Assembly: GCA_964036045.1 (NCBI GenBank)
Contig: OZ038379.1
Span: 8,866,001-8,930,000, forward strand
Source: Eutreptiella sp. 'Long Island Sound 2002'
Taxonomy: Eukaryota > Protista > Euglenida
Direction of reading: 5' to 3'
Length of the DNA: 64,000 nt
Part shown: positions 43,722-59,956 of the stretch, piece after piece
Layout: the number at the start of each line of letters is the position of its first letter
How positions within the stretch are numbered: the first letter of the stretch is position 1
Program-made: the position numbers and the translations under genes
The notes under the pieces: generated by a model
Told to the model about the DNA's origin: nothing
Databases searched by the model: none
The model's input: only the letters and a program-made list of their open reading frames with translations

Positions 43722-46700
43722 CTAGGTATCCAGAGTGTTTGCTCTCCCGTGCCTCGTCACGAAAAGCGGGCGGGCGACATCCTCGGCCATGGTCTCCTCT
43801 AGCCCCCGTGGAACTGGGGCTGGTGGGGACGGAGGGGGGGGTGTTTTCGGCCTCCTGCGTTTGGGGGCTGGAGGGGTGGGGGGTTGGTGTGGGGACCTCA
43901 GCAGACCCGTAGAGATACGTGCAGGCCCTTGCAGGCGTGGTCGTTTGTGGGGCAGTTGTGCATGTGCAGCAAGTGGGCGCTTCCGGCGCGCAGGCACTGG
44001 GGTGCACACTTTATGGTGTCCCCGCTGACAGCAGTGGCGCACTCCCCTTTGCTTGAGTGTGCACCTCGGGCACGGTGGCAGGCCATGCAGTGGGCACAGT
44101 TGCAGTTGCGGTCTGCGTGCTATGTGGTCATCAGCGTGATGTCCCAGCGCACAGCATGCTTCAGCTGTGCGCCGAAGTCTCTTGCAGGTCGTGCATGCGT
44201 CAGCAGAGTGCTGGGCACACTTTGACGGATCAGCCGGCGGCGCCGGTGGTGGCGCCCTGTGTGTGTTTGCGCGCCTGCGTGTCCCGGTGTAGGGGCGCTG
44301 TGGGAGCTTCCCATCCCCTATCACAGGGAAGAAATCAGCTGCAAAGGAGGAGCAGCCCCCCCCCCCCCCCTTTGGCAAAAAGGGTCTGCTCCGAGGACGG
44401 AGCCAGCCCCAACTGCAGATTCCCCTGGAGTGCACGTTGTAGTCGATGCTCCTCCACTTCCTGCGCTGTTCTGCGTGGCCTATGTGTGTACGGGCGCAGT
44501 TTGTGTATTCTGTTGAGACCAACCTTGGTGGCCCACGTGCGCTCACAGTATGCCGCTAACTGCTGAACGTGCATGTTCATGGCACTGCGGCAGGTGAAAT
44601 AGGGGCGGCAGTTCAGGCCGCAGAGTGCCGGCCCCCCCAAAGGAACTAAAGAGCTGCAGCGTGTGACCACACGCGCTGGATGCAAATGGCCTTTGGTGAC
44701 CAGACGCTGCGCATTTGCCATTGCCAGTCGTAAGACCCGGCCTCTCTCTTGCAGTGAAAGGGTGGTGCCCTTAAATTTTGCCTGTGGAGCGTGTGGGAGG
44801 GTGCGTTGCGCAAATTCCTCAAAGTCCAGTGCGAGTTCCAAGAACGTCACTGTGCCTGGTTTAGGGGCCCAGTGCACTTCCCTCAGCCAGCATAGCAGGT
44901 CCGCCAAAAAGGGCATTTCCCACTGCCATTCCACCTTCTTAGGGGTACGCAAAAGAAGTAACCCTTTGTCTTCCGGTCTGGGGAGGGGTCCCACCAGTTG
45001 GTGGTACGGGTATTGCCGAAGCTGCTGTGAGAGGCTCGACCCCATGAAAAGCATGGGGGATTGTGTGTCTCGTAACTTGCGGGCCTGCAAAACGGCTACT
45101 AACATATTGTGCAGAGCTGTCATGAATGCGAGCGCTGTCCCTGACTTGACGCTGTCTGTGTCTAACTCTGGGGCTAATCCACAAAGTCGTAAACATGGGG
45201 GCCACTGGTCCATGAGGGGAAGGCCTGTGATCTGTGCTGCCGCCGTGCTGATGCCCGGCAGGTGGGTGTCCCGCACCGTACTCCAGGCTGAGCACTGCCA
45301 AAAAATGTGCTCCTCGTTTTCCGGAGCATTGCCACAGTACGGGCACGTGGACGTGGCTCTCATGCCACGTTGATAGGCCCGGAGGGCTGTCCAGGTTGCT
45401 CCTGATAGGATGCCCCGCAGGATAGAGCGCTGTAACTCTGTGGCAAATGACGCTATGCTGGGCTGGACCAGGCGCCGGCATGTGGTGTAATGAGCCCCCG
45501 CGAAAAGGCGGGGACGCCTCTAAACTAGGCTGTCCAGCATTTGCGAGCGCAGCTGTTCACGCACCTCGTGCTTGACAGTGTTTTTATCCCCGTATAGGAG
45601 GAGGGGTTCCTGGCGCCCAGGCACTTTCCATCCCCACCATCCCTGCGTAGCGACCCAGCCACACTCCTGTGCTGTGGACATGGCTTGGCCGTATGGGCCG
45701 GAGCCTTTGTGAAATGTTGTCATCTCCCAAATGGCTTGGGCTGTGATCTGTCCAGCACCCCTGGTGCGACACAGCTGGGATAACCACAGGATGCGATGAT
45801 ACTTAAGTACCAAGGTAGGTGCAATCCGGTGTCCTTTGCACAGCAAGGTGAAAAAGATTTCTTTGGCCCTTCCGGGCCGTGACCGTCCCCAAATGGTCTG
45901 CATGACCTTAGTCTCGAAGGGCAGAAGGTCTTTGGGCTGAAGTGGCACTATTTCTGCTGCGTGCAGGCCAGTGGCCGTGATCATTGTGGAGATGATGTCG
46001 CATCTCCTTTCAAAATTGCCCTGAGCACCATGCACCCTATCCAGGAGGCTGCAGGCTCTGGAAATCCTTTTCTTGATGAGCGGTCCCGAACAAGTCGCGT
46101 CCGTGGTGCGGACCCCCGCGCCCAGGGACTTAAACTCAGAAGAGATAGGGAAGGGCACCCCCTGTAGTGCTGCCTTCACTGGGTGACGGGCGTCAGACGA
46201 AAAGCCGACAGATTTCTTCGCGTTCACCCCTTGACCCGTGTCCTCAAGCCAGTCAGTGGTGCAGTCTAGCAGGGGGGTGAGGGTATTGCTTCCGGCTGCA
46301 AACCCATAAGTATCATCCGCATACCCAAGGGCAGTTAGGATGAATTGCAGGGCCTGCGCGCGGGCATATCTCTTCCCTAGTGCGCATAGGCTGTCATACA
46401 GCGACATACAGTCTACCAGCGTTGGCAGGGGGCGTATGAGTGGGAGGGAGGGGTCAAGGGCACTGGCCACAAATTCATGAAGCAGCAGGTCCTCACAAAA
46501 GGCCAGCGCCGTTTTGCGCATGCGGCGGCACGCGGCCTGCCACGATAGTTCCACCTGTCTGGGCACCACCCCTGGCCGGAAAACCTGGCTGGCTTTGCGT
46601 TTGGCGGATGCCGGGACTCGTTTGCCCCTGATGCCCAGCTGGGCACGTTGCCACTGGATGACCGAGCGAAGGGCTCCCAGGGTCCCTGTGATTTTGGAAA

Positions 46701-47800
46701 GTATGCGCGTGCGCGGGCCGCCGTTGGGCGCCAGGCCTGTCGGTGCTAGCGTAGTGTCCCGCAACATTCGCTCCGTGCCACGCCCCCGTGGGGCACTCTT
46801 GGGTGCAAATGGGAGTGTGGGGTTGGGGGTGTCCAGTGTAAGATGCGTGCATGTGAGTGCCATGCCTACTTCCTCGGCCAGCCAGGTCCACCTGTCCCAA
46901 ATGTCATTGACATTTCCCTGTTGCAGCAGGGCATTCCAATCAGCCTTGTGTGGCCGGAGCAGCGAGTCACAGATTTTCTGAGTGTCCTCGGCCGATCTGG
47001 GGGGGGGGGGAGAAAGGAGGCAGTTTCTTGATTTTAACAACTTTCTGCATTGGGACGTCAAGCGAGAAAGTGAAGCACACTGGAGCATGCCCAGGGAGGG
47101 AATGAGACTTCAGCGCTGTGACATCAGTCAACGTGCCCGCTTGCGCTGGGGTGACCAGGAGGCCGTCAATGCGGTTGGGGGGTTTGCCTGCCGTCGTGAA
47201 GCCACATGCACATGGTGTGCCATGGAGAACGCTAAAAGTGCGGTCGGCATCCACCAGCCAGCCGTCTGCCAGCGCCGTCAGGAGCGCAGCAGGAACTTTG
47301 TGCAGCAGGTCGAAATTGAAATTTGCGTCCGTTAGCAGGATGCATCCAGCATTGCCTAGTTTGCTCATATAGCAGACCACCTGCTCCCAGAACTCCTGGT
47401 TCAAAGATTCGTTGCCTGGGATGCCATAGGCCACACATATGTTCAGCACACAGTGCCCTGCACCGATTCCTGCCCGTGTGTGTAGCCAGCGCCCTGAATG
47501 CCACAGCCTGCAGGCAATTGGGTCGTCTGGATCTGGTTCAACCTTGCGGACACTCCAGCCCTTCCTGAACAAAAGTCCCACCCCTCCTTGGGGAGCTCCC
47601 CAGATGCCCCCTGTTGGGGAGCCCAGGGGTTTTCCCCAGTGGCATTCCCAGCCCCATTCTTTTGCAATTGCCCTCATGCAGCGTTGCCCAGCCTCAGTGA
47701 GCCGGGTTTCTTCCATTCCAATCACATCTGCCTGAAAATTGAATACGTCCTCGTGATGGACGCGCAAAGAGGTAACGTTTGTCTGAACGAATTTCAGAGG
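43722..47800 (-). pseudogene. LINE copy 2 ORF2 remnants (APE; deleted RT; nonsense codon at about 45520; frameshifts at homopolymer runs near 47000 and 44360)
   Basis: ORF-track pieces 46967-47767, 45520-47088, 44335-45363 and 43722-44546 align in order to copy 1 ORF2. Confidence 0.9.
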
Positions 47801-47837
47801 ACCTGTAACTCAGTGCCATCTTCCAGGGGGGGGGGGG

Positions 47838-49658
47838 TCAGAGAATGCTCTCATCCTCCTCTGCCGCGGGGGCTCCCGCAGGCGAGTCCTCCATTTCTTC
47901 ATCATCAGGCAAGACACACCCCTGGACCGCAGGGAGCGTCGTGTTTTTCCCCACCGGGGTGTATGAGGGGCCAGTGGATTTACGCAGACATAGGTGCCAC
48001 CTACGGACAGGCATCCGCGAATCCTTCGCCGGTGCAGTGCAGCCCTCCCAGTCTGGGGGGACTCCCGTAATATCCATATCAAACACAGGGTTGATCAGCC
48101 CACTGTGCTTCAGGTGTTGACATCGTTGCACTTTGACAGTGTTAGCGCCGAAAACGCGGTCAGCCTCCCTTTGGGCCGCAGACTGCGACCCTGAGACAAG
48201 GCCCATAGAAATACCATAGCCTCTCACTCTCACTCGTGTCATGGGGGGGGTGAGTTGTATGCCCAACAGTCCTGCAATTTCCTCCCTGGTTTCAGGCAAG
48301 ACAGCCCCCCCCCATACTCGTACCCCGAGTCTGTCGTCCTTGTCCCCTGCCATGAGGCCTGCGAACCAAGGCTGCTTGCTTAATCTGCGCCACTGCTCCG
48401 AAATGGAGCGCTTGTTGGATGGAGGGAGCTTGACCCAGACCATGTTGGCCTTCAGGTCATCGACATCGATGGTTTTGCTCATGAACAACCTGTATTCCAG
48501 GCCGACGATTTTGCCACTGCTGCAGAGCACCTGCTTAGCCATGGGCGCTGGTAGCACCACCGTGACTTCATACTTGCTGCCCGTCTTGCCCACTTGCATG
48601 GGTGGGGGACTGGTGAGTGCCGGCTGGAGTAGGGGGGCCGTCAGCTCCCAGCACGTGTTTTCAGCCCAGCGGGATGCCTTGACTTTGGTGTTGTCCTGTC
48701 CCGCGCGCAGTGCGGAAGGGTCTAGGCAGCACACTATCCGAATGGCAGCCTTGTCCTGAGGTAGCACTTCTGGCTCCGTATCCTGTCCTTCGACGCCGTC
48801 TTTGGGTCGCTCCCAGCAAAGCAGGATGGAGTGCTCAGGTGGGATCACAGTCACATCCGGGTCTCTCTTGACTTCCCAAGACATACGTTTGGTAACGACC
48901 TTGATGCTGAGAACGAAATCCTTGACATGCAAGCATTCTCGTGAACTGCCAAGCGCTGCCAGTATGCCTGGCACATTGACCACTCCCCGTCTGCAGTTTG
49001 TCGCTAGCACGTGTGCGCTGACACTCTGGATGCTGTCATATTTTGTTAAGGCCTGTGCTGCTATTGCGTGCGCTTCCGCCAGCGGTTGCCCCACAAGCAA
49101 AACGTGCTCGAAGGCCTTTGCGGTGGCCTCTGTGACCTTCCAATCATGGACAGGCTTGTTTGCTCCTATCTGTTGCAAAGACTTGAGTGCAGTCTTGTGC
49201 TCTCCCTGGTAAATGCGGCGTCCTTGGACCGCAGTGAAGCCGTGTTTGCCCTCAATTTCATGCACCGCAGTGGCTGTTGGCTGCAGTGGTTCTCCCAGGT
49301 CTGGGACATCCTGTACGACAAGACGGCTCTGTGTTTTCATCCTCCGAGTGAGGGCCGCGCGATAGGGGGACTGTTGCTCGTCCACCACGGTCTGCTCCTT
49401 TGGGGGCACCGATTTACCCCCTGCCGCTTGTAGTGCTGCGCGCAACTCGCGGACCGTGCCACGTAGCTCCCAGATGACGCCAAGGAGTTCCTCTTCCCGT
49501 GCAGTAGTCGTTTTCGCCGGCGGCGGTAGATCCTTCTTCCCACTGAGAGGTGGTGCGATGGCTGCGGCCAGAGCTTCCAGGAGCTCTGGTTTACGTAGCG
49601 CTTCCAAAATTTCATGGGTAAGTCCCGACATTTTGTATGACCCGTGGGGTCGTGCCAA
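47838..49658 (-). CDS. LINE copy 2 ORF1 (606 aa, intact; N-terminal predicted coiled coil, no CCHC knuckle seen)
   Basis: Long ORF directly upstream of the APE-coding region, homologous to the copy 1 ORF1 pieces. Confidence 0.9.
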   Translation of the reverse strand: MARPHGSYKMSGLTHEILEALRKPELLEALAAAIAPPLSGKKDLPPPAKTTTAREEELLGVIWELRGTVRELRAALQAAGGKSVPPKEQTVVDEQQSPYRAALTRRMKTQSRLVVQDVPDLGEPLQPTATAVHEIEGKHGFTAVQGRRIYQGEHKTALKSLQQIGANKPVHDWKVTEATAKAFEHVLLVGQPLAEAHAIAAQALTKYDSIQSVSAHVLATNCRRGVVNVPGILAALGSSRECLHVKDFVLSIKVVTKRMSWEVKRDPDVTVIPPEHSILLCWERPKDGVEGQDTEPEVLPQDKAAIRIVCCLDPSALRAGQDNTKVKASRWAENTCWELTAPLLQPALTSPPPMQVGKTGSKYEVTVVLPAPMAKQVLCSSGKIVGLEYRLFMSKTIDVDDLKANMVWVKLPPSNKRSISEQWRRLSKQPWFAGLMAGDKDDRLGVRVWGGAVLPETREEIAGLLGIQLTPPMTRVRVRGYGISMGLVSGSQSAAQREADRVFGANTVKVQRCQHLKHSGLINPVFDMDITGVPPDWEGCTAPAKDSRMPVRRWHLCLRKSTGPSYTPVGKNTTLPAVQGCVLPDDEEMEDSPAGAPAAEEDESIL

Positions 49659-49788
49659 GCAGGGTTTTCACCAGCCCAGGGGGAGGTAGAAGCAGCCCGT
49701 GTGATGACAGAGTCACCGAGGATCGCGCCTGTTTGGCTTTCGGTTGGGTATGCAGTGTCACCAGCTGGCAGGCACCAAACAAAACACC

Positions 49789-49826
49789 TGTGTGTGTGTG
49801 TGTGTGTGTGTGTAGCGTGTGTGTGT
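49789..49826. repeat. (GT)n microsatellite between the LINE copy 2 5' end and the PLE
   Basis: Read directly. Confidence 1.
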
Positions 49827-52800
49827 TTACATTGGTCAGTTGGGCTGTATCACCCAGCCGCGCCCCCCGATTGTGCGCTTCCGTGAACACCATTGCGGAG
49901 GTAAGGCCCTCAGTAAAACCTACACTGGCAAGTCCCACCAAGGAAAAAAGACTTTCGGTGGTACAGCAGTCCCCTCCCTGCCCAGACTCATTGCTAGGTT
50001 TGGGGCTGGTATGTTCTCCATGCTTCCCATGCAGTATGTTACTACAGAACACCCCCTGTGTCTGGAAGGTGAGTGGAATACCCTGTGTGCCCCCACAGTC
50101 AACGCCCGAGACCCGGCCCATGTCCCCCTTCGTGAAGAGTGGTCGACCCTACTCAATGCCATTGCATGCCCTTCCGATTGCAAACAGTATGCAAAACTTG
50201 TAAATACAGTGATCTCCAACCATGCTCAGGTGGGCCACCTAAATGACCTCCTGCTATTCATGGCTGATGTCAATACCTATGTGAAGGGCCCACAGTTCGA
50301 CAAATTGTTTTCGGTAATTGCTAAGCGTGTGAACCGGGAGCTAAGGGTATCCCTACCGAGGCGGATCACCCTCCACCTCCCCTCATACTCCAGCACGTTA
50401 AACTCGTGGCTGCAGGACCTCCTGAAACGTGTATGCATGAAACACTCCGCCCCCTCAGGCATCAAACACTGGCTGATGCGAGCCGTCACAATTGTCCCTG
50501 TAAAAGCTGCCAAAGTAGTTGACGCTGTGCGCAAGCACCAGGCGCCAGTGGTTGCGGAACACACAATCGCGTGGCTCACACGGAACACACCCCTCATGCC
50601 TGAAAACCCCTACCCCAACCAAATCCCCCCGTATCAAAAGCTCCAATCCCCACTAAGCACAGAGCAACTGCAAGCCCTCCGTGCCACGTTGCGTGCAGAG
50701 CTACAGAAATATCACTGCGCCTGCTCTGCGTGGCAGGAAACACACCCGTGTCTCGCGAACCCTACGGGTCATGTGATCATTCGCACGACACAACAGGCGA
50801 ATGCACTCCTACTACCGAATGAAGCAAAGTTGCTCGTTGAGAATGCACGGGTCCCCCTCCTACCAAACCCCACCCACCTAACGGACAGCCTTGCCAGATT
50901 CCGCCTGGATCTGGTTAAAGCGGTGATCCCTGTAGCCATTCCCCACTGTGACCGACCCCTGCCGGCCCCACTTCTGCCGCTTGACCAAGTTGATGCCATA
51001 TGTCACTCCGTGAGAGAGCGATGCCTAACAGAGATCCAAGCATGCCACAGCAGGGCCCCATGGCTCAGTGAAACTACGCGGAGCTCCGTGAAAAGCACCA
51101 TGCGCCATATGCAGCTGGTAGGACATTTCTGGGACAAACAACCAACGAAGGTGTCAGCTCAGTGCTTCAAGTTAAATGAGTTTCGGTGCCTGGACAACAT
51201 CCTAACGGGGAAAAAATTCCGGATCCTGGGCTTTGCCCCCTCGCCCTACCTGGCCCAGGCCCATGGCCTTTATCTCCTTGTCTCCTCTGCGCAGCAAGCA
51301 GGGGTCACAAAAGATGCGAAGCGCCACAACCAGCTACCTGCGGCCTATGCCTCCCCCTCCTCCTTCCAGGAAATGCTGATGCATACAGTACACTCGGAAG
51401 CCCCCCTGCCCCACAGGCCCCCCTCTGTGTACTCTACTCTTAAATGGAAAGCAGATGAGTTGAGCGCCACCACACTGGGTGAGGGACTAAAATGGAGAGA
51501 GATCGTCACTTTCATTGGCCACCCGCTTGAAACCTGGGGCAAAAGTATGGGCCGCTGCCTAAAACTTCTGGTTGAAGCGGCGGCAGAGGCTGTACCTGGC
51601 CTGGGCACCCCCCTACTCCTAAATGTGCGAGATGCTTTCCTGGCCCTGGTGCGCCAAAACCCAGACTGGTCCTGTACGCTTCCTGATGAAGCGGACATGG
51701 ATGACCAGTACTGGAACATCCCCAGGGGAGAAGTTGAGGATGCACTAGAGTGGGCCCTGAGCCTTGTCAAGAAACATGTCCGCTGTGAGCATGTCTGGTT
51801 CTCCCTGGGCAAATTAGACAAGCGATTAGACAGAGTAGGGAAAGCGTGCGGACCGTACCACACTGTGATCTCTCAAGAGGAACTGACTCGATATGTGAAG
51901 TGGGACCTCCATCACAACACAGTCCTCACGCTGGGCTGCCTGCTACTCCAACAAACAGATATTGGTATGGCCATTGGGGGGTTCCTGTCGTCACATGCAG
52001 CTGAGCTTTGGTGTCTCTGGCGTGAGGTACACTGCTGCAAACCGTATGCGATCCCTGAGTTTACCAACTCCATTCTTGATAACATGAGGTGCCAGCTCAG
52101 CCTGCCTGAGTATACCGACCCGGCTGCCCCTGTAGACATTTTTGTGGACCTTGCCCTGAGCCCCCCCAAGCCGTACTTCAATGGCTCGCTCCCCCTGCAT
52201 GCATGTGATCATGATGGCCTGATTGCACATGAAGAGTCCCCCCAGGTGACCCCGAACGACCTAAGTGATGAAGGTTTCCTTCCCTGGTGGTCCCCAGTTG
52301 ATACAGTGTGGGGGCTACTCACCCTCAATGGCCTCTGCATACCAATCCTCTCCCCAGCCCCCTGGGATGGTGCCCCGGCTGGGCGACTGCACAACATCCT
52401 GCAGCATGCTCCCCGCAAGGACAAAGCTGACCTCAGGCTGTTATTCATAGAGGTACATATGCCCAAAATTGCACTCTCCGAAGCCTTAAAGGGCTGGAAA
52501 AATTGGTATCAACTCAGCCTCCTCAACCCCCCCCAGGAGCACACCCCAGCCCTCATGCTGAGCCGGTTCAAAGACAATTGTCGTATATTTCTGATCTCCA
52601 TACCCCCTTCTCTGCATCAGCCATGCCGTGCTTTCTGTTTTGCCTTCCTGTCTGCACTCTACAAGATGCCCCTAAAGTGGGAACACCACCCCCCCCTGGC
52701 CCCATGGGGTACAGCCACGGTCAGCATCAGTAATGCAGGGCCATCCCTCATGCGCAAGGGCACCACGCTATCTGCCAATGCCCCACAGGCGGAATGGCTG

Positions 52801-53082
52801 ACCTGGCCCCCGGTGTATGCCCCGAATGCGCGCACAACCCTGCGCTCCCACCTGCCGGCACTAATGCTTGATTCCATATGGTTTGCCCTCTCCTCAGCCG
52901 ATGTGGTATGCAATTTTAGGTCCATTGCATGGGGGCTGGGGTACTGCAATTACCCATCTGTGTGGTGGCGAACCTCTGCACACCGGTTCTTGCGTAACTA
53001 CGTCCTCCTCCAGGTTGTGTCCACACATCAGTTTATGCTGTGGGTATCGGAAGGTAGAACCACATCTCAAAATCAAGTGTAG
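49819..53082 (+). CDS. PLE polyprotein (1087 aa, N-terminus missing): GIY-YIG half-domain, long linker, PLE-type RT and thumb
   Basis: VYIGQ...RFREH...LEGEW...PTVN (GIY-YIG); PSVYSTLKWK...WREIV, DMDDQYWNIP, QQTDIGMAIGGFLSSHAAEL, RFKDN and ...GLGYCNYP (PLE RT). The called GTG start lies inside the microsatellite. Confidence 0.85.
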   Translation: MCVYIGQLGCITQPRPPIVRFREHHCGGKALSKTYTGKSHQGKKTFGGTAVPSLPRLIARFGAGMFSMLPMQYVTTEHPLCLEGEWNTLCAPTVNARDPAHVPLREEWSTLLNAIACPSDCKQYAKLVNTVISNHAQVGHLNDLLLFMADVNTYVKGPQFDKLFSVIAKRVNRELRVSLPRRITLHLPSYSSTLNSWLQDLLKRVCMKHSAPSGIKHWLMRAVTIVPVKAAKVVDAVRKHQAPVVAEHTIAWLTRNTPLMPENPYPNQIPPYQKLQSPLSTEQLQALRATLRAELQKYHCACSAWQETHPCLANPTGHVIIRTTQQANALLLPNEAKLLVENARVPLLPNPTHLTDSLARFRLDLVKAVIPVAIPHCDRPLPAPLLPLDQVDAICHSVRERCLTEIQACHSRAPWLSETTRSSVKSTMRHMQLVGHFWDKQPTKVSAQCFKLNEFRCLDNILTGKKFRILGFAPSPYLAQAHGLYLLVSSAQQAGVTKDAKRHNQLPAAYASPSSFQEMLMHTVHSEAPLPHRPPSVYSTLKWKADELSATTLGEGLKWREIVTFIGHPLETWGKSMGRCLKLLVEAAAEAVPGLGTPLLLNVRDAFLALVRQNPDWSCTLPDEADMDDQYWNIPRGEVEDALEWALSLVKKHVRCEHVWFSLGKLDKRLDRVGKACGPYHTVISQEELTRYVKWDLHHNTVLTLGCLLLQQTDIGMAIGGFLSSHAAELWCLWREVHCCKPYAIPEFTNSILDNMRCQLSLPEYTDPAAPVDIFVDLALSPPKPYFNGSLPLHACDHDGLIAHEESPQVTPNDLSDEGFLPWWSPVDTVWGLLTLNGLCIPILSPAPWDGAPAGRLHNILQHAPRKDKADLRLLFIEVHMPKIALSEALKGWKNWYQLSLLNPPQEHTPALMLSRFKDNCRIFLISIPPSLHQPCRAFCFAFLSALYKMPLKWEHHPPLAPWGTATVSISNAGPSLMRKGTTLSANAPQAEWLTWPPVYAPNARTTLRSHLPALMLDSIWFALSSADVVCNFRSIAWGLGYCNYPSVWWRTSAHRFLRNYVLLQVVSTHQFMLWVSEGRTTSQNQV

Positions 53083-53422
53083 TGGCAGCCTGGGTGGCAC
53101 TTCATACTGTTCCTTGTTGCTTCCAGCGTTGCTGGCCAGGCGAGGTACCCCCTGTGGCTGCACCCCACTTCCCCACTTCGCCTCTTCACGGGTGTCATTT
53201 TTTGGAGACGGTCATTTTTTAGAGGCGGTCTCAATTCCGGAGGACTCTCCACGACCGCGTGACCTCGTTCTCTTGGCCGGACGCCTTGTTGGCTGGAATG
53301 CCAGTGGCGAGTTCGCTGCGGCGTTCCCCACGGTGTCAGGGCATGGAGACGTCGTCACCGCGTGGAAAGGCACAACACCGTGTGGCTGCCCCCCCCCCCC
53401 TGTCTCCCCCCCCCCCATACAG

Positions 53423-53897
53423 CGCCATCACCTGAAGGTGTGAACAAATGTGATCACACGGACATGGAGTGCGTACACGCATACACAGCCCCGGCACGCA
53501 GTATGCCCCGGGGTACTGATGGTTCGTCTCTGGTGTTTTGTTGCGCTGGTGGCACTGAACTCTGTCCCCTTAGGCCTGCTGGGTCCCTCTGCGCCATCAC
53601 CTGAAGGTGTGAACAAATGAAGGTGTGAAGAGATGGGACCACACGGACATGGAGTTCGTATATGCATACACTGCCCCGGCACGCAGTACGCCCCGGGGTA
53701 AATGAACCACTCAATGCTTCTCGGTGAACACCCCCAGCGCTAGGTCAAGTGGGTTTGTCGTTCCTTCGCTGCCCGTGGCGGCATAGCTCCAGCCCCCACG
53801 CCCCATACGCCATCACCTGAAGGTGTGAAGACCTGTGGTCACATGACATGGAATGCGTATACGCATACACACCTCCGGCACGCAGTATGCCCCGGGG
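53423..53897 (+). repeat. Three 90-110-nt hairpin-rich repeats separated by less similar spacers in the PLE 3' region
   Basis: Units at about 53423-53515, 53592-53700 and 53808-53897 (CGCCATCACCTGAAGGTGTGAA...CCGGCACGCAGTAYGCCCCGGGG). Confidence 0.9.
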
Positions 53898-54498
53898 ACA
53901 AGGGAATTGCGTCCCGTGGGTGGCAGTACATGTGTGTTGTCACCAGGCCACCCCCGAGATGATACGACCGCATGTGTGCACCCACACCTGCATGTTTTGT
54001 TGTTTGTTTGTGCTGGGCCCCAGTGAGCAACCCAGCCAAAGGGCACCCCCAGCGCCAAGTCAATTGGGTTGTCTTTCCTGCGCTGCCTGTGGCAGCACCA
54101 GCCGTCTTGTGCAGGTGCATGTTCCTGCACCCCGTAGTATAGCAAACGCCTTACAGGCACAGTGTCGGTACCTCCCCCCGACGCGCAGTGAAACGAAAGG
54201 CAAAGGCCTGGAGTGATGCCAGCTACTCTATGATGCAGGGTGCTACCCCAGCAGAAACCACAGATGTGATTAATCGTGAGTTGTAGGCACCAGCTGAGTG
54301 GCCCTGACCCAGAGGTTGTGGTGAGGACAGCTCTATCTGACCTGGCCTATCCCTTGACCCTCAGCCGTAAGGGTGCATGGACACTGGTACCCACTGCCGC
54401 GAACTGCACTGGTTCTTTGTTGCACTGTGCTCACTCTACAGCCTCATGCTGCAGCTTTGAGAAGAGCTTTCGTTGTTGTGCTGTGCTTTGTAAACACT

Positions 54499-54720
<222 letters not shown>

Positions 54721-54853
54721 GCTCTGTTCTTTGATGAGGTAGATCCTTGTGCAGCATTGGGTTGGACGTCCCATTCAGCTCAGGTCTGCTGAGGCCTCTG
54801 TGTGACGTTGTTTCCCCCCCTTCTGCGGAATCAGACCCTCTGTGTTTGGTTGG

Positions 54854-57800
54854 TTATGTGACCGAAGTACTGGCTCTCCCATGCCTCGACAAAAAGAGTG
54901 GTCGGGCTACTGCATCCTCGGCTTCGTCACCTTCCAGTCCCTGTGGAACAGGTGGTGGGGGGGATGGGGGCGGTGGTGTTTTCGGCCTTCTGCGCTTGGG
55001 CGCCGGTGGCGTGGGCGGTTGGTGTGGGGACCTCAGCAGACCTGATGAGTGCCGTGCTGGCCTTTGCAGGCAAGGTTTTTTGTGGGGCAACAGAGATTGC
55101 ATAGGGAGAGTACGTTTCCTGTGTGCCGGGACCGGGGTGCATACCTTGTGGTGCCCCCGGTCACAACAATGGCGCACCCCTCTCTGCTTGAGGGTACATC
55201 TCGGGCAGGGGGGTAAGTTATGCAAGGGGCATAGTTGCAACTGTGGCCTACGAGCCACGTGGCTTGCTGCGTGATGCCCGAGCTTGCAGCACTCTTCTGC
55301 CGATTTGCGCAGTCTCTTGCAGGTCATTCATGCCAGCGCTGTGTGTGCCACGCATTTGGAATGGTCGACCCTCGGTGCCAAGTGTGGCGTGGTGTGTGTT
55401 GACACGTGTCTGCGCGTGCCTGTGTAGGGGCGTTGTGGCAAGCGCCCATCCCCAATAACTGGGAAGAAATCGGCCCCAAAAGACGAGTTCGATCCCCCCC
55501 CCTTGGCTGGCATTATCTGCTCTGATGGGGGTGCCAGTCCTGTCTGCAGATTGCCACGGAGAGCCCGGTGCAGCCTGTGTGATTCCACTTCTGCGGCTGA
55601 CCTGCGCGGGCGAGATGCGTATGGCCGTGGCGCATGCACTCTGTGCGCACCCACTTTGGAGGACCATAATTGTTCGCAGTAATCTGCCAACTTTTGGATG
55701 TGGAAAAGCATTGCATTCCTGCCTGCGAAATAAGGGCGGCAATTCAGCCCACATAGCGCTGGTCCTCCCTGAGGGACCAACGAACTGCATCGCGTGACGA
55801 TGCGTGCTGGGTGCAGTTGGCCTTTGGTGACAAGTCGCTGCACACTGTTCATGGCCAGCCGCAGCACCCTGCCCCTTTCATGCAGTGAAAGTGTCGTTCC
55901 CTTGAATTTGGCTTGTGGTGCATGTGGCAGGGTACGCTCGGCAAATTCTTCGAAGTCCAGAGCTAACTCTAAGGAGGTCACTGAACCCGGTTCTTGTGTC
56001 CAGGTCAGAGCCCTCAACCATCGCAGAAGATCGGCAAGGAATGGCGTTTCCCACGGCCACTCATGCTTTTTGGGGGTGCGGAGCAGTAGTGTGTCTTTCT
56101 CCCCACTATATGGTAGTGGCCCTACCAACTGTTGGTATGGGTACTGTCGTAACTGTTGTGACCGGGCGGTTCCTGGAAAAACGGCTGGGGCCTGCGCGTC
56201 GCGCACTTTCCGAGCTTGCAAGACAGCTACGAACATGGTATGCAAAGTGTTCAAGAAGGTGTAGGCCCTCCCTGATTTGATGCAGTCATCTGGGATTTCA
56301 GGTGCCAGCCCACAACATCTGAGGCATGGAGGCCATTGATCTGGGGGGAGAAGGCTCGGTATGTGTGCGGCCGCATCGAGGACGTCAGGCATGTGAGCGG
56401 TGCGTGCAGTGTGCCAAGCAGTGCAGTGCCACAATATGTGTTCCTCGTCCTCTGGTGCATTGCCACAAAAAGGGCATGTCGAGGCCACGCGCATACCCCT
56501 CTGGTATGCCCTGAGTGCCGTCCAAGTGGCTCCAGAGAGGATGCCCCGGAGGATGGACCGCTGTAGTTCCGTGTCAAAAGCAGCTACACTGGGTTGTACC
56601 AGCTGCCTGCACGTGGCGTAATGGACCCCAGCAAAAAGTCGGGGCCGCCGCTGCACTAACGCATCCAGCATTTGGGAACGCAGCTGTTCACGCACTTCGT
56701 GCTTCACTGTGTTTTTGTCCCCGTAGAGTAGCAGGGGGTCGCTTTTCCCTGGTACCTTCCAACTCCACCACCCCTGCACTGACACCCACCCACATTCGTG
56801 TGCGGTGTGAATTGCACGGCCGAAAGGCCCAGACCCCTTGTGGCACTGATCTGTTTCCCAAATCGCCTGGCCGGTGATCTGGTTTGCACCTCTGGTGCGG
56901 CATAGATGTGCCAGCCATAATATGCGGTGGTATTTGTGCACCAGAGTTGGTGCAATTCTGTGTCCCTTGCAGAGCAAGGTGAAGAAAACTTCCTTGGCCC
57001 TGCCGGGCCGTGATGGCCCCCAGATTGTCCTCATGACCTTCGATTCAAATGGCAGCAAATCCCTAGGTCGCAGGGGTACTATCTCCGCTGCATGCAAGCC
57101 TGTGGCGGTGATCATTGTCGAAATGACATCGCACCGCCGTTCAAAGTTCCCTTGTGCCCCGTGTACCCTGCTGAGTAAACTGCATGCCCTAGCGACGCGT
57201 TTGAGGATTAACGGGCCCGAGCAAGTGGCGTCAGTGGTGCGGACGCCCGCTCCCAAAGATTTAAACTCCGTGGAGATGGGGAAGGGGACTCCTTGCAACG
57301 CAGCCTGCACTGGATGTTGCTTGTCAGACGAGAAGCCGACTGATTTCTTCGCATTTACCCCTTGACCTGTGTCCTGCAACCAGGTGGACGTGCATTCCAA
57401 CAGCGGCGTGAGTGTGTTGGACCCCGCTGCAAAACCATACATGTCATCTGCATACCCTAGTGCCGTCAGTACGTAATGCATCACCTGCACTGGCTGATCA
57501 CTGGGGGGGAGTCTCTGCACTGAAACCGTGATGCCTTGCTGCTGGGCATCTAACACACGCTTCCAAACACTCGTCATGAGGTTTATGAGGATAACACTCA
57601 ATGGACAACCTTGAAGTATGCCGTTTGTGGCAGCGAAAAAACTGGCGCAACATCCCATGATTTTAAAACAGCGTGTGAGTGTGTGATACATGCCACTGAG
57701 GGCTCTGTGTGTTCCTGGGTCCATGCCCTGCGCGAGGGCAATGTACAGAACAATGGACTGCGGTATCAAATCAAAGCACTTCACATAATCCAGCCCGAAA

Positions 57801-59956
57801 CCGTGCAAGACTTTCTTTATGAGTTTTTGCAGCTCAACAAGCATCGAGATATGAGAGGCTGCATCTGTGGCTCCCCTCTTTTTCCTGATGCCATACGCAT
57901 GAGGGTGGATCCAGTGTTCCTGCCACTGCATGCATTCCTCCAGGCGTATACCGGCCCAGACTCTGTAAATTTGAGACAAGACTGACAGGGGCCTCTGCTG
58001 CATGGGCAGCATGCCCTCCCCGTTTGGAATGAGGGAGACATATCCCCTCGCCAGGATGATTGGCCAGCAGCCACTTTGTTCTATGAGGTGCAATAACTGA
58101 GACAGCATGTCCAGCAGACGGACAGGCAACAGTAGCAGATCAGCCACACACCACCCATCCAGCCCAGTGGCCGTATGCACCCCCATTTTTCTCAGGCGTT
58201 TTGCGAGGCGGGCTCCCGTGATGGGATTCGCCTGCATGCGCGCTCCTTTTTGGAAAAACCGGTCATACTTTTGCGCAAAAGCGCGCACGTCGCGCTCAGG
58301 TGTGTCCGCATATTTTCTCATGACTTTGTCCCATGAGGCGTGCAAAATTTCATCCATCCGCTGGATATTGGATGTGGGTTGATTGGTGTCAGGGTCCAGA
58401 AGCATGACCAGGGGGGGTTGGTATTCATTTTGGATCCATTTGCACACTTCCTTCGGTTTATCTATCCATGCACTGTCCATTTTGGCTTTCCATTTCTCTA
58501 GTCTGGCGCGTTCCTCATGTCGGGCATATTTTTTCCCCAATAAGCACAGCTGGTCGTACGTATGCATGGTATCGACCAGTGCTGGCAACGGGCGGTCACT
58601 GGGAAGCGTGGGATCAGGGGCCAGCGCAACAAATTCATGGAGTAACAGATCCTCTCGAAAGGCTGAGCCCACTTTGCGCATGCGACGACACGCAGCCTTC
58701 CACGACAGCTCTACCTGTTTTGGTATGGCACCTGGTCTGAAAATCTGTCTGGCCTTGCGCCTGGCCGAGGCTGGCACCTTTTTCCCTTTAATGCCTGCCT
58801 GGCTGCGCTGCCATTGTATCACTGTGCGGAGAGCGCCCAGCGTTCCTGTAATTTTAGAGAGAAGACGTGTTCTCGGCCCCCCTGTGGGGGCTATGCTCCG
58901 CGGAGCCAATGTGGTCTCCTGCAGCATGCGCTCTGTGCCGCGCCCCCTGGGAGTCGCCTTGGGAGCAAAAGGAAGTTCAGGGGCAGGGGTGTCAATCGTG
59001 AGGTGGGTGCACGACAGTGCCATGCCCACTTCTTCCGCAAGCCAGGTCCACTGTGCCCAGATGGCATTCACATCTCCCCCGAGCAGTAGCTGTTCCCACT
59101 CGTCCTGATGCGGACGGAGTAGGGTCTCGCTGATTTTCTGCGCGTCTTTCTCTGACCTTGGGGGGGGTAGAAAAGGAGGTAGCTTCCTCATTTTAATGAC
59201 TTTCTGGAGCGGGGCATCCAGAGAAAAGGTAAAGCATACTGGGACATGCCCCGGAAGGGAATGATCATGCAAAGCCGAAACATCAGCCAGCGTGCCTGCC
59301 TGAGCTGGAGTGACTAGAAGACCATCAATGCGGTTAGCAGACTTGCCGTCCTTTGAAAAGCCGCACACACACGGCTTGCCGTGCAAGATGGCATGGGCTC
59401 GGTCAGCGTCCACCAACCAGCCATCCGCCATCGCAGTCAGTGGGGCCGACGGAATTTTATGCAAGATATCAAAGTTGAAATTGGCATCAGTGAGTAATAT
59501 ACAGCCTGCGTTCCCCAGCCGGCTCAGGTAGCAAATAACCAATTCCCAAAATTCCCGATTCAGTGTTTCGTTGCCCGCCACGCCATATGCAACACATACG
59601 TTCAGCACACATTGTCCTGCACCTATTCCTGCACTGGTATGCAACCACCGCCCTGAATGCCATAGCCCGCAGGCGATGGGATCATCCTCATCTGGTTCTA
59701 CTTTGCGTACATTCCAGCCCTTTTTGAACAAGAGGCCCACTCCCCCTTGTGGTGCACCCCAAATACCCCCAGTGGGGGAACTCAGTGGCTTCCCCCAATA
59801 ACAGTCCCATCCCCATTCTGCTGCAGTGGCCTTCATGCAGCGTTGCCCGGCTTCTGTAAGCCGAGTCTCCTCCATTCCAATGACATCAGCCTGAAAATGG
59901 AAAACGTCCTCATGGCGGACGCGCAGTGATGTGACATTTGTATTGATAAATTTCAA
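54854..59956 (-). CDS. LINE copy 1 ORF2: APE endonuclease, RT, CxxC..HILWHC zinc motif and C-terminal Cys/His extension (one premature stop near 55328)
   Basis: NTNV..L, GMEET, GGVGLL, DANFN, RIDGLL and DHSLPGH (APE); GLDGW, RPLSVLS, DYVKCFD, QGCPLS and YADD (RT); CPFCGNAPEDEEHILWHC. TGA replaces the TGC seen in copy 2. Confidence 0.95.

What the first reader, a model, noticed from the sequence alone, without database searches (positions are those of the whole stretch)
49819..53082. Penelope-like RT with N-terminal GIY-YIG, a large insertion in the RT palm and an FKDN active site
Seen: the ORF opens with the second half of a GIY-YIG nuclease (VYIGQ..RFREH..LEGEW..PTVN), then about 420 aa of linker, then PLE-type RT motifs. 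About 180 residues (about 52027-52566) separate the B' motif (GMAIGGFLSS..E) from motif C, which reads RFKDN rather than RYxDD. Known: most PLEs carry GIY-YIG at the C-terminus, while the Naiad/Chlamys clade carries it at the N-terminus; B' to C is normally short. Inference: this is a Chlamys-like or new PLE lineage carrying an unrecognised inserted domain (core GFLPWWSPVDTVWGLLTL...PWDG...GRLHNI). The ORF has stayed open for 3.2 kb, suggesting recent activity despite DD to DN.
Basis: partly seen in the sequence, partly recalled or inferred. Interest (0 to 1): 0.82.

Follow-up and report, generated by a model that had tools for sequence, protein, structure and literature searches.

The report
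Truncated Euglena Penelope-like retroelement copy
This is a young but dead, front-truncated copy of a telomerase-related (Penelope-like) jumping gene in a Euglena genome; its whole family has an Asp-Asn instead of Asp-Asp active-site motif, and this branch also has an extra 165-residue domain inside the copying enzyme.

Summary
The 1087-codon ORF, the half GIY-YIG, the RT motifs, the roughly 186-residue gap between motifs B' and C, and RFKDN are all present.

The ORF is not a complete gene. It is a 4.7-kb, 5'-truncated copy (49824-54506) of a roughly 9.4-kb element. The copy sits in a (TG)n microsatellite between two LINEs, and its GTG "start" lies in the microsatellite. The host is a Euglena, shown by 5,458 matches to its spliced leader.

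Predicted structures support the Penelope-like reading:
- CxC and DK motifs, an IFD-sized A-to-B spacing, partial-tandem pseudo-LTRs, 5' truncation and (CA)n targeting fit the Naiad/Chlamys type.

The Asp-Asn motif is family-wide. Every subfamily in this genome, and distant kin from metagenomes, read R[FY][RK]DN; none reads DD. The 165-residue insert is an in-frame, confidently folded domain under purifying selection, so it is not an intron. Distant kin lack it, so it is specific to this clade. Its fold remains unassigned.

Pfam detects nothing in this family. The scan has already noted DN-type Penelope-like elements elsewhere in this genome. Verdict: a new variant of a known kind.

The parts
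49789..49826 (.). (TG)18 microsatellite, left flank of the insertion. The ORF's GTG start lies in it.
   Evidence: Tandem Repeats Finder; sequence read.
49824..54506 (+). 5'-truncated copy (4.68 kb) of a roughly 9.4-kb Penelope-like retroelement.
   Evidence: It is 98.8% identical to L002/C17 over 49824-54253. The same 3' end, followed by (GT)n, is seen in C12 and in C17 unit 2.
49819..53082 (+). Open frame of 1087 codons, the C-terminal two thirds of the family's roughly 1590-aa ORF2.
   Evidence: The fused full ORF is seen in L008 and in the family alignment.
49825..50112 (+). GIY-YIG endonuclease remnant. It keeps YIGQ, R..EH, E and N, but the first (IY) strand is missing.
50716..50775 (+). 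CxC motif (CAC...HP...GHV) in the linker between EN and RT.
   Evidence: Conserved in all subfamilies and in distant kin. It is a diagnostic Naiad/Chlamys motif according to PMC8557442.
51127..51141 (+). DK motif (FWDKQ).
   Evidence: WDK appears in the consensus of alignment A3 and.
51418..53079 (+). TERT-like reverse transcriptase with fingers, palm, an IFD-sized A-to-B region, and thumb/CTE.
51694..51714 (+). RT motif A (DMDDQYW; family pattern D-h-x-[DE]-M-F-[WP]).
   Evidence: Alignments.
51964..52005 (+). RT motif B' (GMAIGGFLSSHAAE).
   Evidence: Alignments.
52042..52536 (+). Clade-specific inserted domain of about 165 aa between motifs B' and C, mixed beta and helical.
   Evidence: Present in all fetched subfamilies of the window's lineage and absent from P0049, P0066, P0075, P0106 and P0119. 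Block pLDDT 79-98. dN 0.27-0.38 with saturated dS.
52561..52578 (+). RT motif C, SRFKDN, with Asp-Asn at the beta-hairpin turn.
   Evidence: Strands at model residues 372-378 and 381-387 flank D380/N381. The motif is family-wide.
53083..54506 (+). 3' untranslated region containing three degenerate units of about 190 bp (53422-53900). The last 510 bp form the pseudo-LTR seen upstream of the full copy in C17.
54502..54721 (.). (GT)110 microsatellite, right flank. It is also the (CA)n tail of the minus-strand LINE to the right.

Best explanation
The locus is a recently inserted but dead copy of a Penelope-like (telomerase-related) retrotransposon in a Euglena genome.

Full-length relatives have this layout:
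- a partial-tandem pseudo-LTR;
- ORF1, with a single zinc-knuckle-like motif (CX2CX4HX4H) in the L021 subfamily (read by eye, no domain match);
- a roughly 1600-aa ORF2 made of an unknown N-terminal region, a GIY-YIG endonuclease, a linker with CxC and DK motifs, and a TERT-like RT.

Inferred mechanism, by analogy with studied PLEs: the GIY-YIG domain nicks the target, which is a (CA)n/(TG)n microsatellite for this subfamily. The RT then extends the 3'-OH on the element RNA (target-primed reverse transcription). This often stops early, which would explain why this copy begins inside the endonuclease.

Two features are fixed properties and not damage. The RT motif C is R[FY][RK]DN throughout the family. 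In the window's lineage, a folded domain of about 165 residues lies between motifs B' and C.

The layout, folds, conservation and copy history are shown here. Catalysis with Asp-Asn, and the role of the insert, are inferred.
For: - Multi-copy family: 5,726 first-look candidates, copies at 90-98% identity, and kin at 30-38% identity with intact 1640-1674-aa ORFs.
- Three fetched copies of the L021 subfamily (L021, L025, L032) are 99.7-99.8% identical with intact 1671-1674-aa ORFs; five loci (these plus L027 and L031) share an exact 3' end in unrelated flanks. An upstream 281-bp 3' fragment forms a pseudo-LTR.
- RT fold: pLDDT 92.5, with TERT first in three searches. Atlas neighbours carry GIY-YIG plus RVT_1.
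- CxC and DK motifs are conserved.
- (TG)n lies on both flanks of the window copy, and the same 3' end next to (GT)n occurs at two other loci. Craig et al. report (CA)n targeting, pseudo-LTRs and 5' truncation for Chlamys (PMC8557442).
- DN is universal: 42 of the motif matches among the best 150 library hits read R[FY][RK]DN and none reads DD.
- Purifying selection acts between subfamilies, including on the insert.
- The host is Euglena: 5,458 spliced-leader matches against 0 for the reversed control.
Against: - Pfam RVT_1 and GIY-YIG do not reach E=1 on any member, and no PDB sequence matches. The assignment therefore rests on predicted structure and short motifs.
- No phylogeny with reference PLEs or TERTs was possible.
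- In studied RTs the second Asp of motif C is needed for activity (my own knowledge), so catalysis with DN is unproven.
- No intact full-length copy of the window's own subfamily was seen among the loci fetched. L002 has one in-frame stop and L008 is interrupted by an insertion.
Confidence: 0.85

Rival explanations
1. The family is a separate RT class, sister to PLEs and TERTs and not a member of the Naiad/Chlamys clade. On this view it gained an N-terminal GIY-YIG independently.
For: It is invisible to Pfam and to sequence searches against the PDB. It differs from canonical PLEs in motif C (DN) and motif B' (IGG in place of QG). TM-scores to PLE-like Atlas models are only about 0.55.
Against: The set of CxC motif, DK motif, IFD-sized A-to-B spacing, EN without a CCHH finger, pseudo-LTRs and (CA)n targeting matches the published Chlamys description point by point (PMC8557442).
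Confidence: 0.12
2. The Asp-Asn RT is catalytically dead. The elements would then be moved in trans by another RT, with the protein kept only for RNA binding or endonuclease function.
For: In well-studied RTs, changing the second Asp of motif C abolishes activity (my own knowledge). The genome also holds many other retroelements: two LINEs flank this copy, and further GIY-YIG-bearing ORFs exist.
Against: Motifs A, B' and C and the whole RT are under strong purifying selection across lineages at 30% identity, and in metagenomic kin. Two deep lineages, with thousands of candidate copies each, keep DN. Right-hand polymerases of mononegaviruses work with GDN (my own knowledge).
Confidence: 0.1
3. 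The 165-residue stretch between B' and C is an unspliced intron or a nested insertion, not part of the protein.
For: Distant relatives lack it entirely.
Against: It is in frame with no stops in every intact copy. It has conserved protein motifs (GF..WW.P.D, WDGAP.GR) at 30% overall identity. It is modelled with block pLDDT 79-98. It has dN well below a saturated dS.
Confidence: 0.02

Closest known systems
Chlamys, the N-terminal-endonuclease Penelope-like elements of green algae, Chara, Selaginella and Physarum (Craig et al. 2021, PMC8557442)
   Same: N-terminal GIY-YIG without a CCHH finger and with R, H, E and N retained. CxC motif, and DK motif without a fixed third residue. Long A-to-B (IFD) region. 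Pseudo-LTRs, 5' truncation and (CA)n targeting. No canonical hammerhead ribozyme. Long, structurally varied elements, some with an upstream gag-like ORF.
   Different: Motif C reads DN. The text of the paper that I could read gives no motif C sequence for Chlamys, so this difference is unverified. A 165-aa domain lies between B' and C, whereas the insertions listed in the paper are elsewhere. About 450 extra residues precede the EN. The host is a euglenid. Pfam does not see the domains.
Naiad, the N-terminal-endonuclease PLEs of animals
   Same: Domain order EN, then CxC, then RT; TERT-like RT with an IFD.
   Different: According to PMC8557442, Naiads have CCHH and CX2-5CxxC fingers and a DKA motif, and are 3.4-4.4 kb. 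This family lacks the fingers and is 7.4-9.4 kb.
Telomerase reverse transcriptase (TERT)
   Different: No TEN or TRBD match was found. This is a multi-copy mobile element with an endonuclease, it has DN where TERT has DD, and it has a B'-to-C insert.
Mononegavirus L-protein polymerases (GDN motif C)
   Same: A right-hand polymerase that works with Asp-Asn in motif C (my own knowledge). This is an analogy for how DN could be active.

Membership tests
[quoted passage not shown] | GIY-YIG endonuclease N-terminal to the RT | tested here: met
[quoted passage not shown] | CxC motif between EN and RT | tested here: met
   CxC...HP...GHV is present in all subfamilies and in distant kin.
[quoted passage not shown] | DK(G) motif upstream of the RT core | tested here: met
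   WDKQ in the Euglena subfamilies and WDK in the A3 consensus. It is weaker or unaligned in the most distant kin.
[quoted passage not shown] | TERT-related RT with an insertion-in-fingers region between motifs A and B' | tested here: met
   TERTs rank first. The A-to-B' spacing is about 90 residues with extra helices and strands.
[quoted passage not shown] | Partial-tandem pseudo-LTRs, frequent 5' truncation, microsatellite targeting | tested here: met
   There is a 281-bp 3' fragment upstream of the full L021 copy, and a 510-bp fragment in C17. Truncated copies appear. (TG)n flanks are shown.
[quoted passage not shown] | Placement inside the clade in an RT phylogeny | not testable with these tools
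Chlamys, as opposed to Naiad | EN lacks the CCHH and CX2-5CxxC zinc-finger motifs | tested here: met
   No Cys pair lies within or upstream of the IY...YIGQ core.
Canonical reverse transcriptases | Motif C with two adjacent aspartates (YxDD) | tested here: not met
   The family reads R[FY][RK]DN throughout, and no DD was found among the members examined.
Canonical PLEs (Penelope/Poseidon, Neptune, Nematis) | C-terminal GIY-YIG and hammerhead ribozyme in the pseudo-LTR | tested here: not met
   The EN is N-terminal. Rfam gives no match up to E=1 in 49000-56000.

The most novel reading that the evidence does not exclude
The DN-type elements form a deep, undescribed Penelope-like superfamily in euglenids and in environmental protists. 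Their RT would work with an Asp-Asn metal site, possibly with a changed metal or substrate preference. One branch would have gained a new palm-inserted domain with its own role in reverse transcription.
Probability: 0.35. Interest if true: 0.75.

Novelty: new variant of a known kind. Interest (0 to 1): 0.55.

Why it matters
Penelope-like elements are the closest mobile relatives of telomerase. This lineage is abundant and seems to have been active recently. It keeps Asp-Asn at the polymerase active site, and it carries a folded domain inside the palm. If activity is confirmed, that would show more flexibility in RT catalytic chemistry and architecture than is assumed.

It would also extend N-terminal-endonuclease PLEs to Euglenozoa. 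Their origin there is open. Transfer from the green-algal plastid donor is one possibility, but that is speculation.

There is a practical point as well. These proteins escape Pfam, so they probably account for part of the "unclassified" third of the repeats reported for Euglena gracilis (PMC11252322).

Tried and rejected
**Searches that gave nothing**
- Pfam scans of the ORF, ten kin and eight library hits found no relevant family.
- PDB sequence searches with the single protein and with a profile found nothing meaningful.
- Word-based protein searches found only near-identical fragments from an ENA assembly of what is evidently the same organism. P0066 from ENA is 100% identical to a locus in this genome.
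- Foldseek with the whole 582-residue N-terminal model gave no match. The exhaustive VIA search did find the GIY-YIG domain.
- The language-model look-alike search on the insert alone was uninformative: 0.93 with few shared features.
- No row in the whole-model VIA search was confined to the insert.
- The Rfam scan for hammerhead ribozymes was blank.

**Hypotheses rejected**
- A dinoflagellate host, because the dinoflagellate spliced leader has 0 hits.
- DN as a private mutation.
- The insert as an intron.
- The C17 10-kb tandem as purely element-made. Its units include a 390-bp LINE fragment plus (TG)n, so a local duplication is involved.

**Steps that could not be run**
The other GIY-YIG-bearing element families of this genome were therefore not compared.
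- The text of PMC8557442 that I could read does not state the motif C sequence of Chlamys, and no supplement is held.

Full report
**What is in the window**

One search lists an open frame at 49819-53082 (+) of 1087 codons. The frame starts with a GTG that lies inside a (TG)18 microsatellite.

DNA comparison with other copies shows that homology begins only at 49824 and runs to about 54506, where a (GT)110 tract starts. The same 3' end next to (GT)n is seen at independent loci on C12 and C17.

Fuller copies (L002, L008) continue upstream. They carry the first GIY-YIG strand (IY), about 450 further N-terminal residues, and a separate upstream ORF. The window therefore holds a 4.68-kb, 5'-truncated copy of a roughly 9.4-kb element. 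It is inserted in a (CA)n/(TG)n tract between two minus-strand LINEs.

The copy is 98.8% identical to its nearest relative, and the two differ with dN/dS of 0.66. It is a young, dead copy that is decaying neutrally.

**The host**

The genome is 2.28 Gb. A dinoflagellate spliced leader has no match. The Euglena spliced leader, which I recalled from memory, matches 5,458 times, against 0 for the reversed control. Earlier notes from this scan gave me that lead.

In the library I could search, no paper describes Penelope-like elements in euglenids. The Euglena gracilis genome paper leaves about a third of the repeats unclassified.

**The family**

The own-genome search found 5,726 first-look candidates. 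These include copies at 86-98% identity (plus one decayed copy at 60%) and kin at 30-38% identity, several with intact ORFs of 1640-1674 aa.

One subfamily has three fetched copies (L021, L025, L032) that are 99.7-99.8% identical with intact 1671-1674-aa ORFs; these and two further loci (L027 with a shorter open frame, L031 at 96-97% identity) all end at exactly the same base in unrelated flanks. The L021 copy is preceded by a 281-bp fragment of the element's 3' end, which is a pseudo-LTR formed by partial tandem insertion. The C17 copies show a 510-bp pseudo-LTR of the same kind.

A full HMM search of 1.84 billion representatives found 1,658 proteins at E of 0.001 or better. Nearly all are fragments. 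A few are full-length and distant: P0049, P0066 and P0075. P0066 is 100% identical to a locus in this same genome and stands for a second deep lineage with thousands of candidates. P0075 comes from a JGI metagenome.

**Identity of the protein**

Pfam finds nothing at E up to 1 in any member, and sequence searches of the PDB are blank. Predicted structures settle the question.

- The RT part (window 51436-53079, with a 120-row alignment) was modelled at pLDDT 92.5 and pTM 0.91.
- Foldseek ranks telomerase RTs first (E 2.6e-4).
- The nearest ESM Atlas models are clusters whose members carry GIY-YIG and RVT_1, or the PLE-associated HTH_animal and DUF8422 families.
- The N-terminal part was taken from the 98%-identical L002 copy, which has the whole endonuclease, and modelled at pLDDT 85.

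The family also has several features that Craig et al. (PMC8557442) give for the N-terminal-endonuclease PLEs, and for Chlamys in particular:

- a conserved CxC motif and a DK motif;
- an A-to-B' spacing of about 90 residues;
- no CCHH finger in the endonuclease;
- no hammerhead ribozyme;
- pseudo-LTRs, 5' truncation and (CA)n targeting.

**The Asp-Asn motif**

Every subfamily in this genome reads SR[FY][RK]DN. So do the distant full-length kin. Among the best 150 library hits, the R[FYW][RK]D-x pattern is followed by N in 42 cases and never by D.

In the model, the Asp and Asn sit at the turn of the motif C hairpin. Motifs A (D-h-x-[DE]-M-F) and B' are also conserved.

Between subfamilies, dS is saturated while dN is 0.09-0.38 in all regions. 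DN is therefore an old, selected state in a family that seems to have been mobile recently. Whether the enzyme polymerises with it has not been shown. Mononegavirus polymerases, which use GDN, offer an analogy (my own knowledge).

**The insert**

Relative to P0049, P0066, P0075, P0106 and P0119, the window's lineage has about 165 extra residues between B' and C, at ORF residues 742-906.

- It is in frame in all intact copies.
- It has its own conserved motifs.
- It is modelled as a compact domain of beta strands followed by four helices, with block pLDDT 79-98.
- It is under purifying selection.

It is not an intron. Members that carry it also occur on short JGI metagenome contigs.

I could not assign a fold.

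**Verdict**

The thing itself is a dead, truncated copy. The interest lies in its family: a Pfam-invisible, Chlamys-like PLE lineage in Euglena with a fixed Asp-Asn motif and, in this branch, a palm-inserted domain. Other windows of this genome have already produced notes on DN-type PLEs. I rate it a new variant of a known kind. The main open points are its phylogenetic placement, its enzymatic activity and the fold of the insert.

Noticed in passing
window 45520-49658 (-) and 54722-59956 (-): Two LINE copies lie on the minus strand. One has a 1542-aa ORF2 with RVT_1 and zf-RVT hits; an N-terminal AP-endonuclease part is my reading of the sequence, with no Pfam hit. A 606-aa ORF sits directly upstream of the left copy's ORF2 fragments. 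The right-hand LINE ends in a (CA)n tail, seen as (GT)110 on the plus strand, and the PLE sits in that tract.
   Followed up: partly
window 53422-53900: The 3' UTR of the element holds three degenerate direct units of about 185-200 bp. Copies on C9 carry more units.
   Followed up: partly
L035-L037 (C17:31864000-31893999): Two 10,090-bp tandem units of the element are 99.15% identical. They are separated by a 390-bp piece made of a LINE 3' fragment plus (TG)n, so the array arose at least partly by local duplication.
   Followed up: partly
L021:304-2337 (+): ORF1 of the L021 subfamily (678 aa) has one zinc-knuckle-like CX2CX4HX4H motif and no Pfam hit. It overlaps the start of ORF2.
   Followed up: no
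L008:1468-5490 (-) and the first ~460 residues of L021:2304-7325 (+): A conserved region of about 450 residues precedes the GIY-YIG domain in full-length ORF2 proteins. It has motifs such as LTGGAEDF and WEWWL.DGG and no Pfam match. It is absent from the window copy.
   Followed up: no
G000, for example C13:30519301, C15:10973891, C1:136514980: The Pfam GIY-YIG model hits 96 places in the genome above its cut-off. Some lie in open frames of 1000-3500 aa, which suggests other endonuclease-bearing element families. The loci could not be fetched.
   Followed up: no
L033:2148-8986 (C3:179126147-179132985): The C3 copy of the element is interrupted by an insertion of about 6.8 kb at the point that corresponds to window position 52305.
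   Followed up: no
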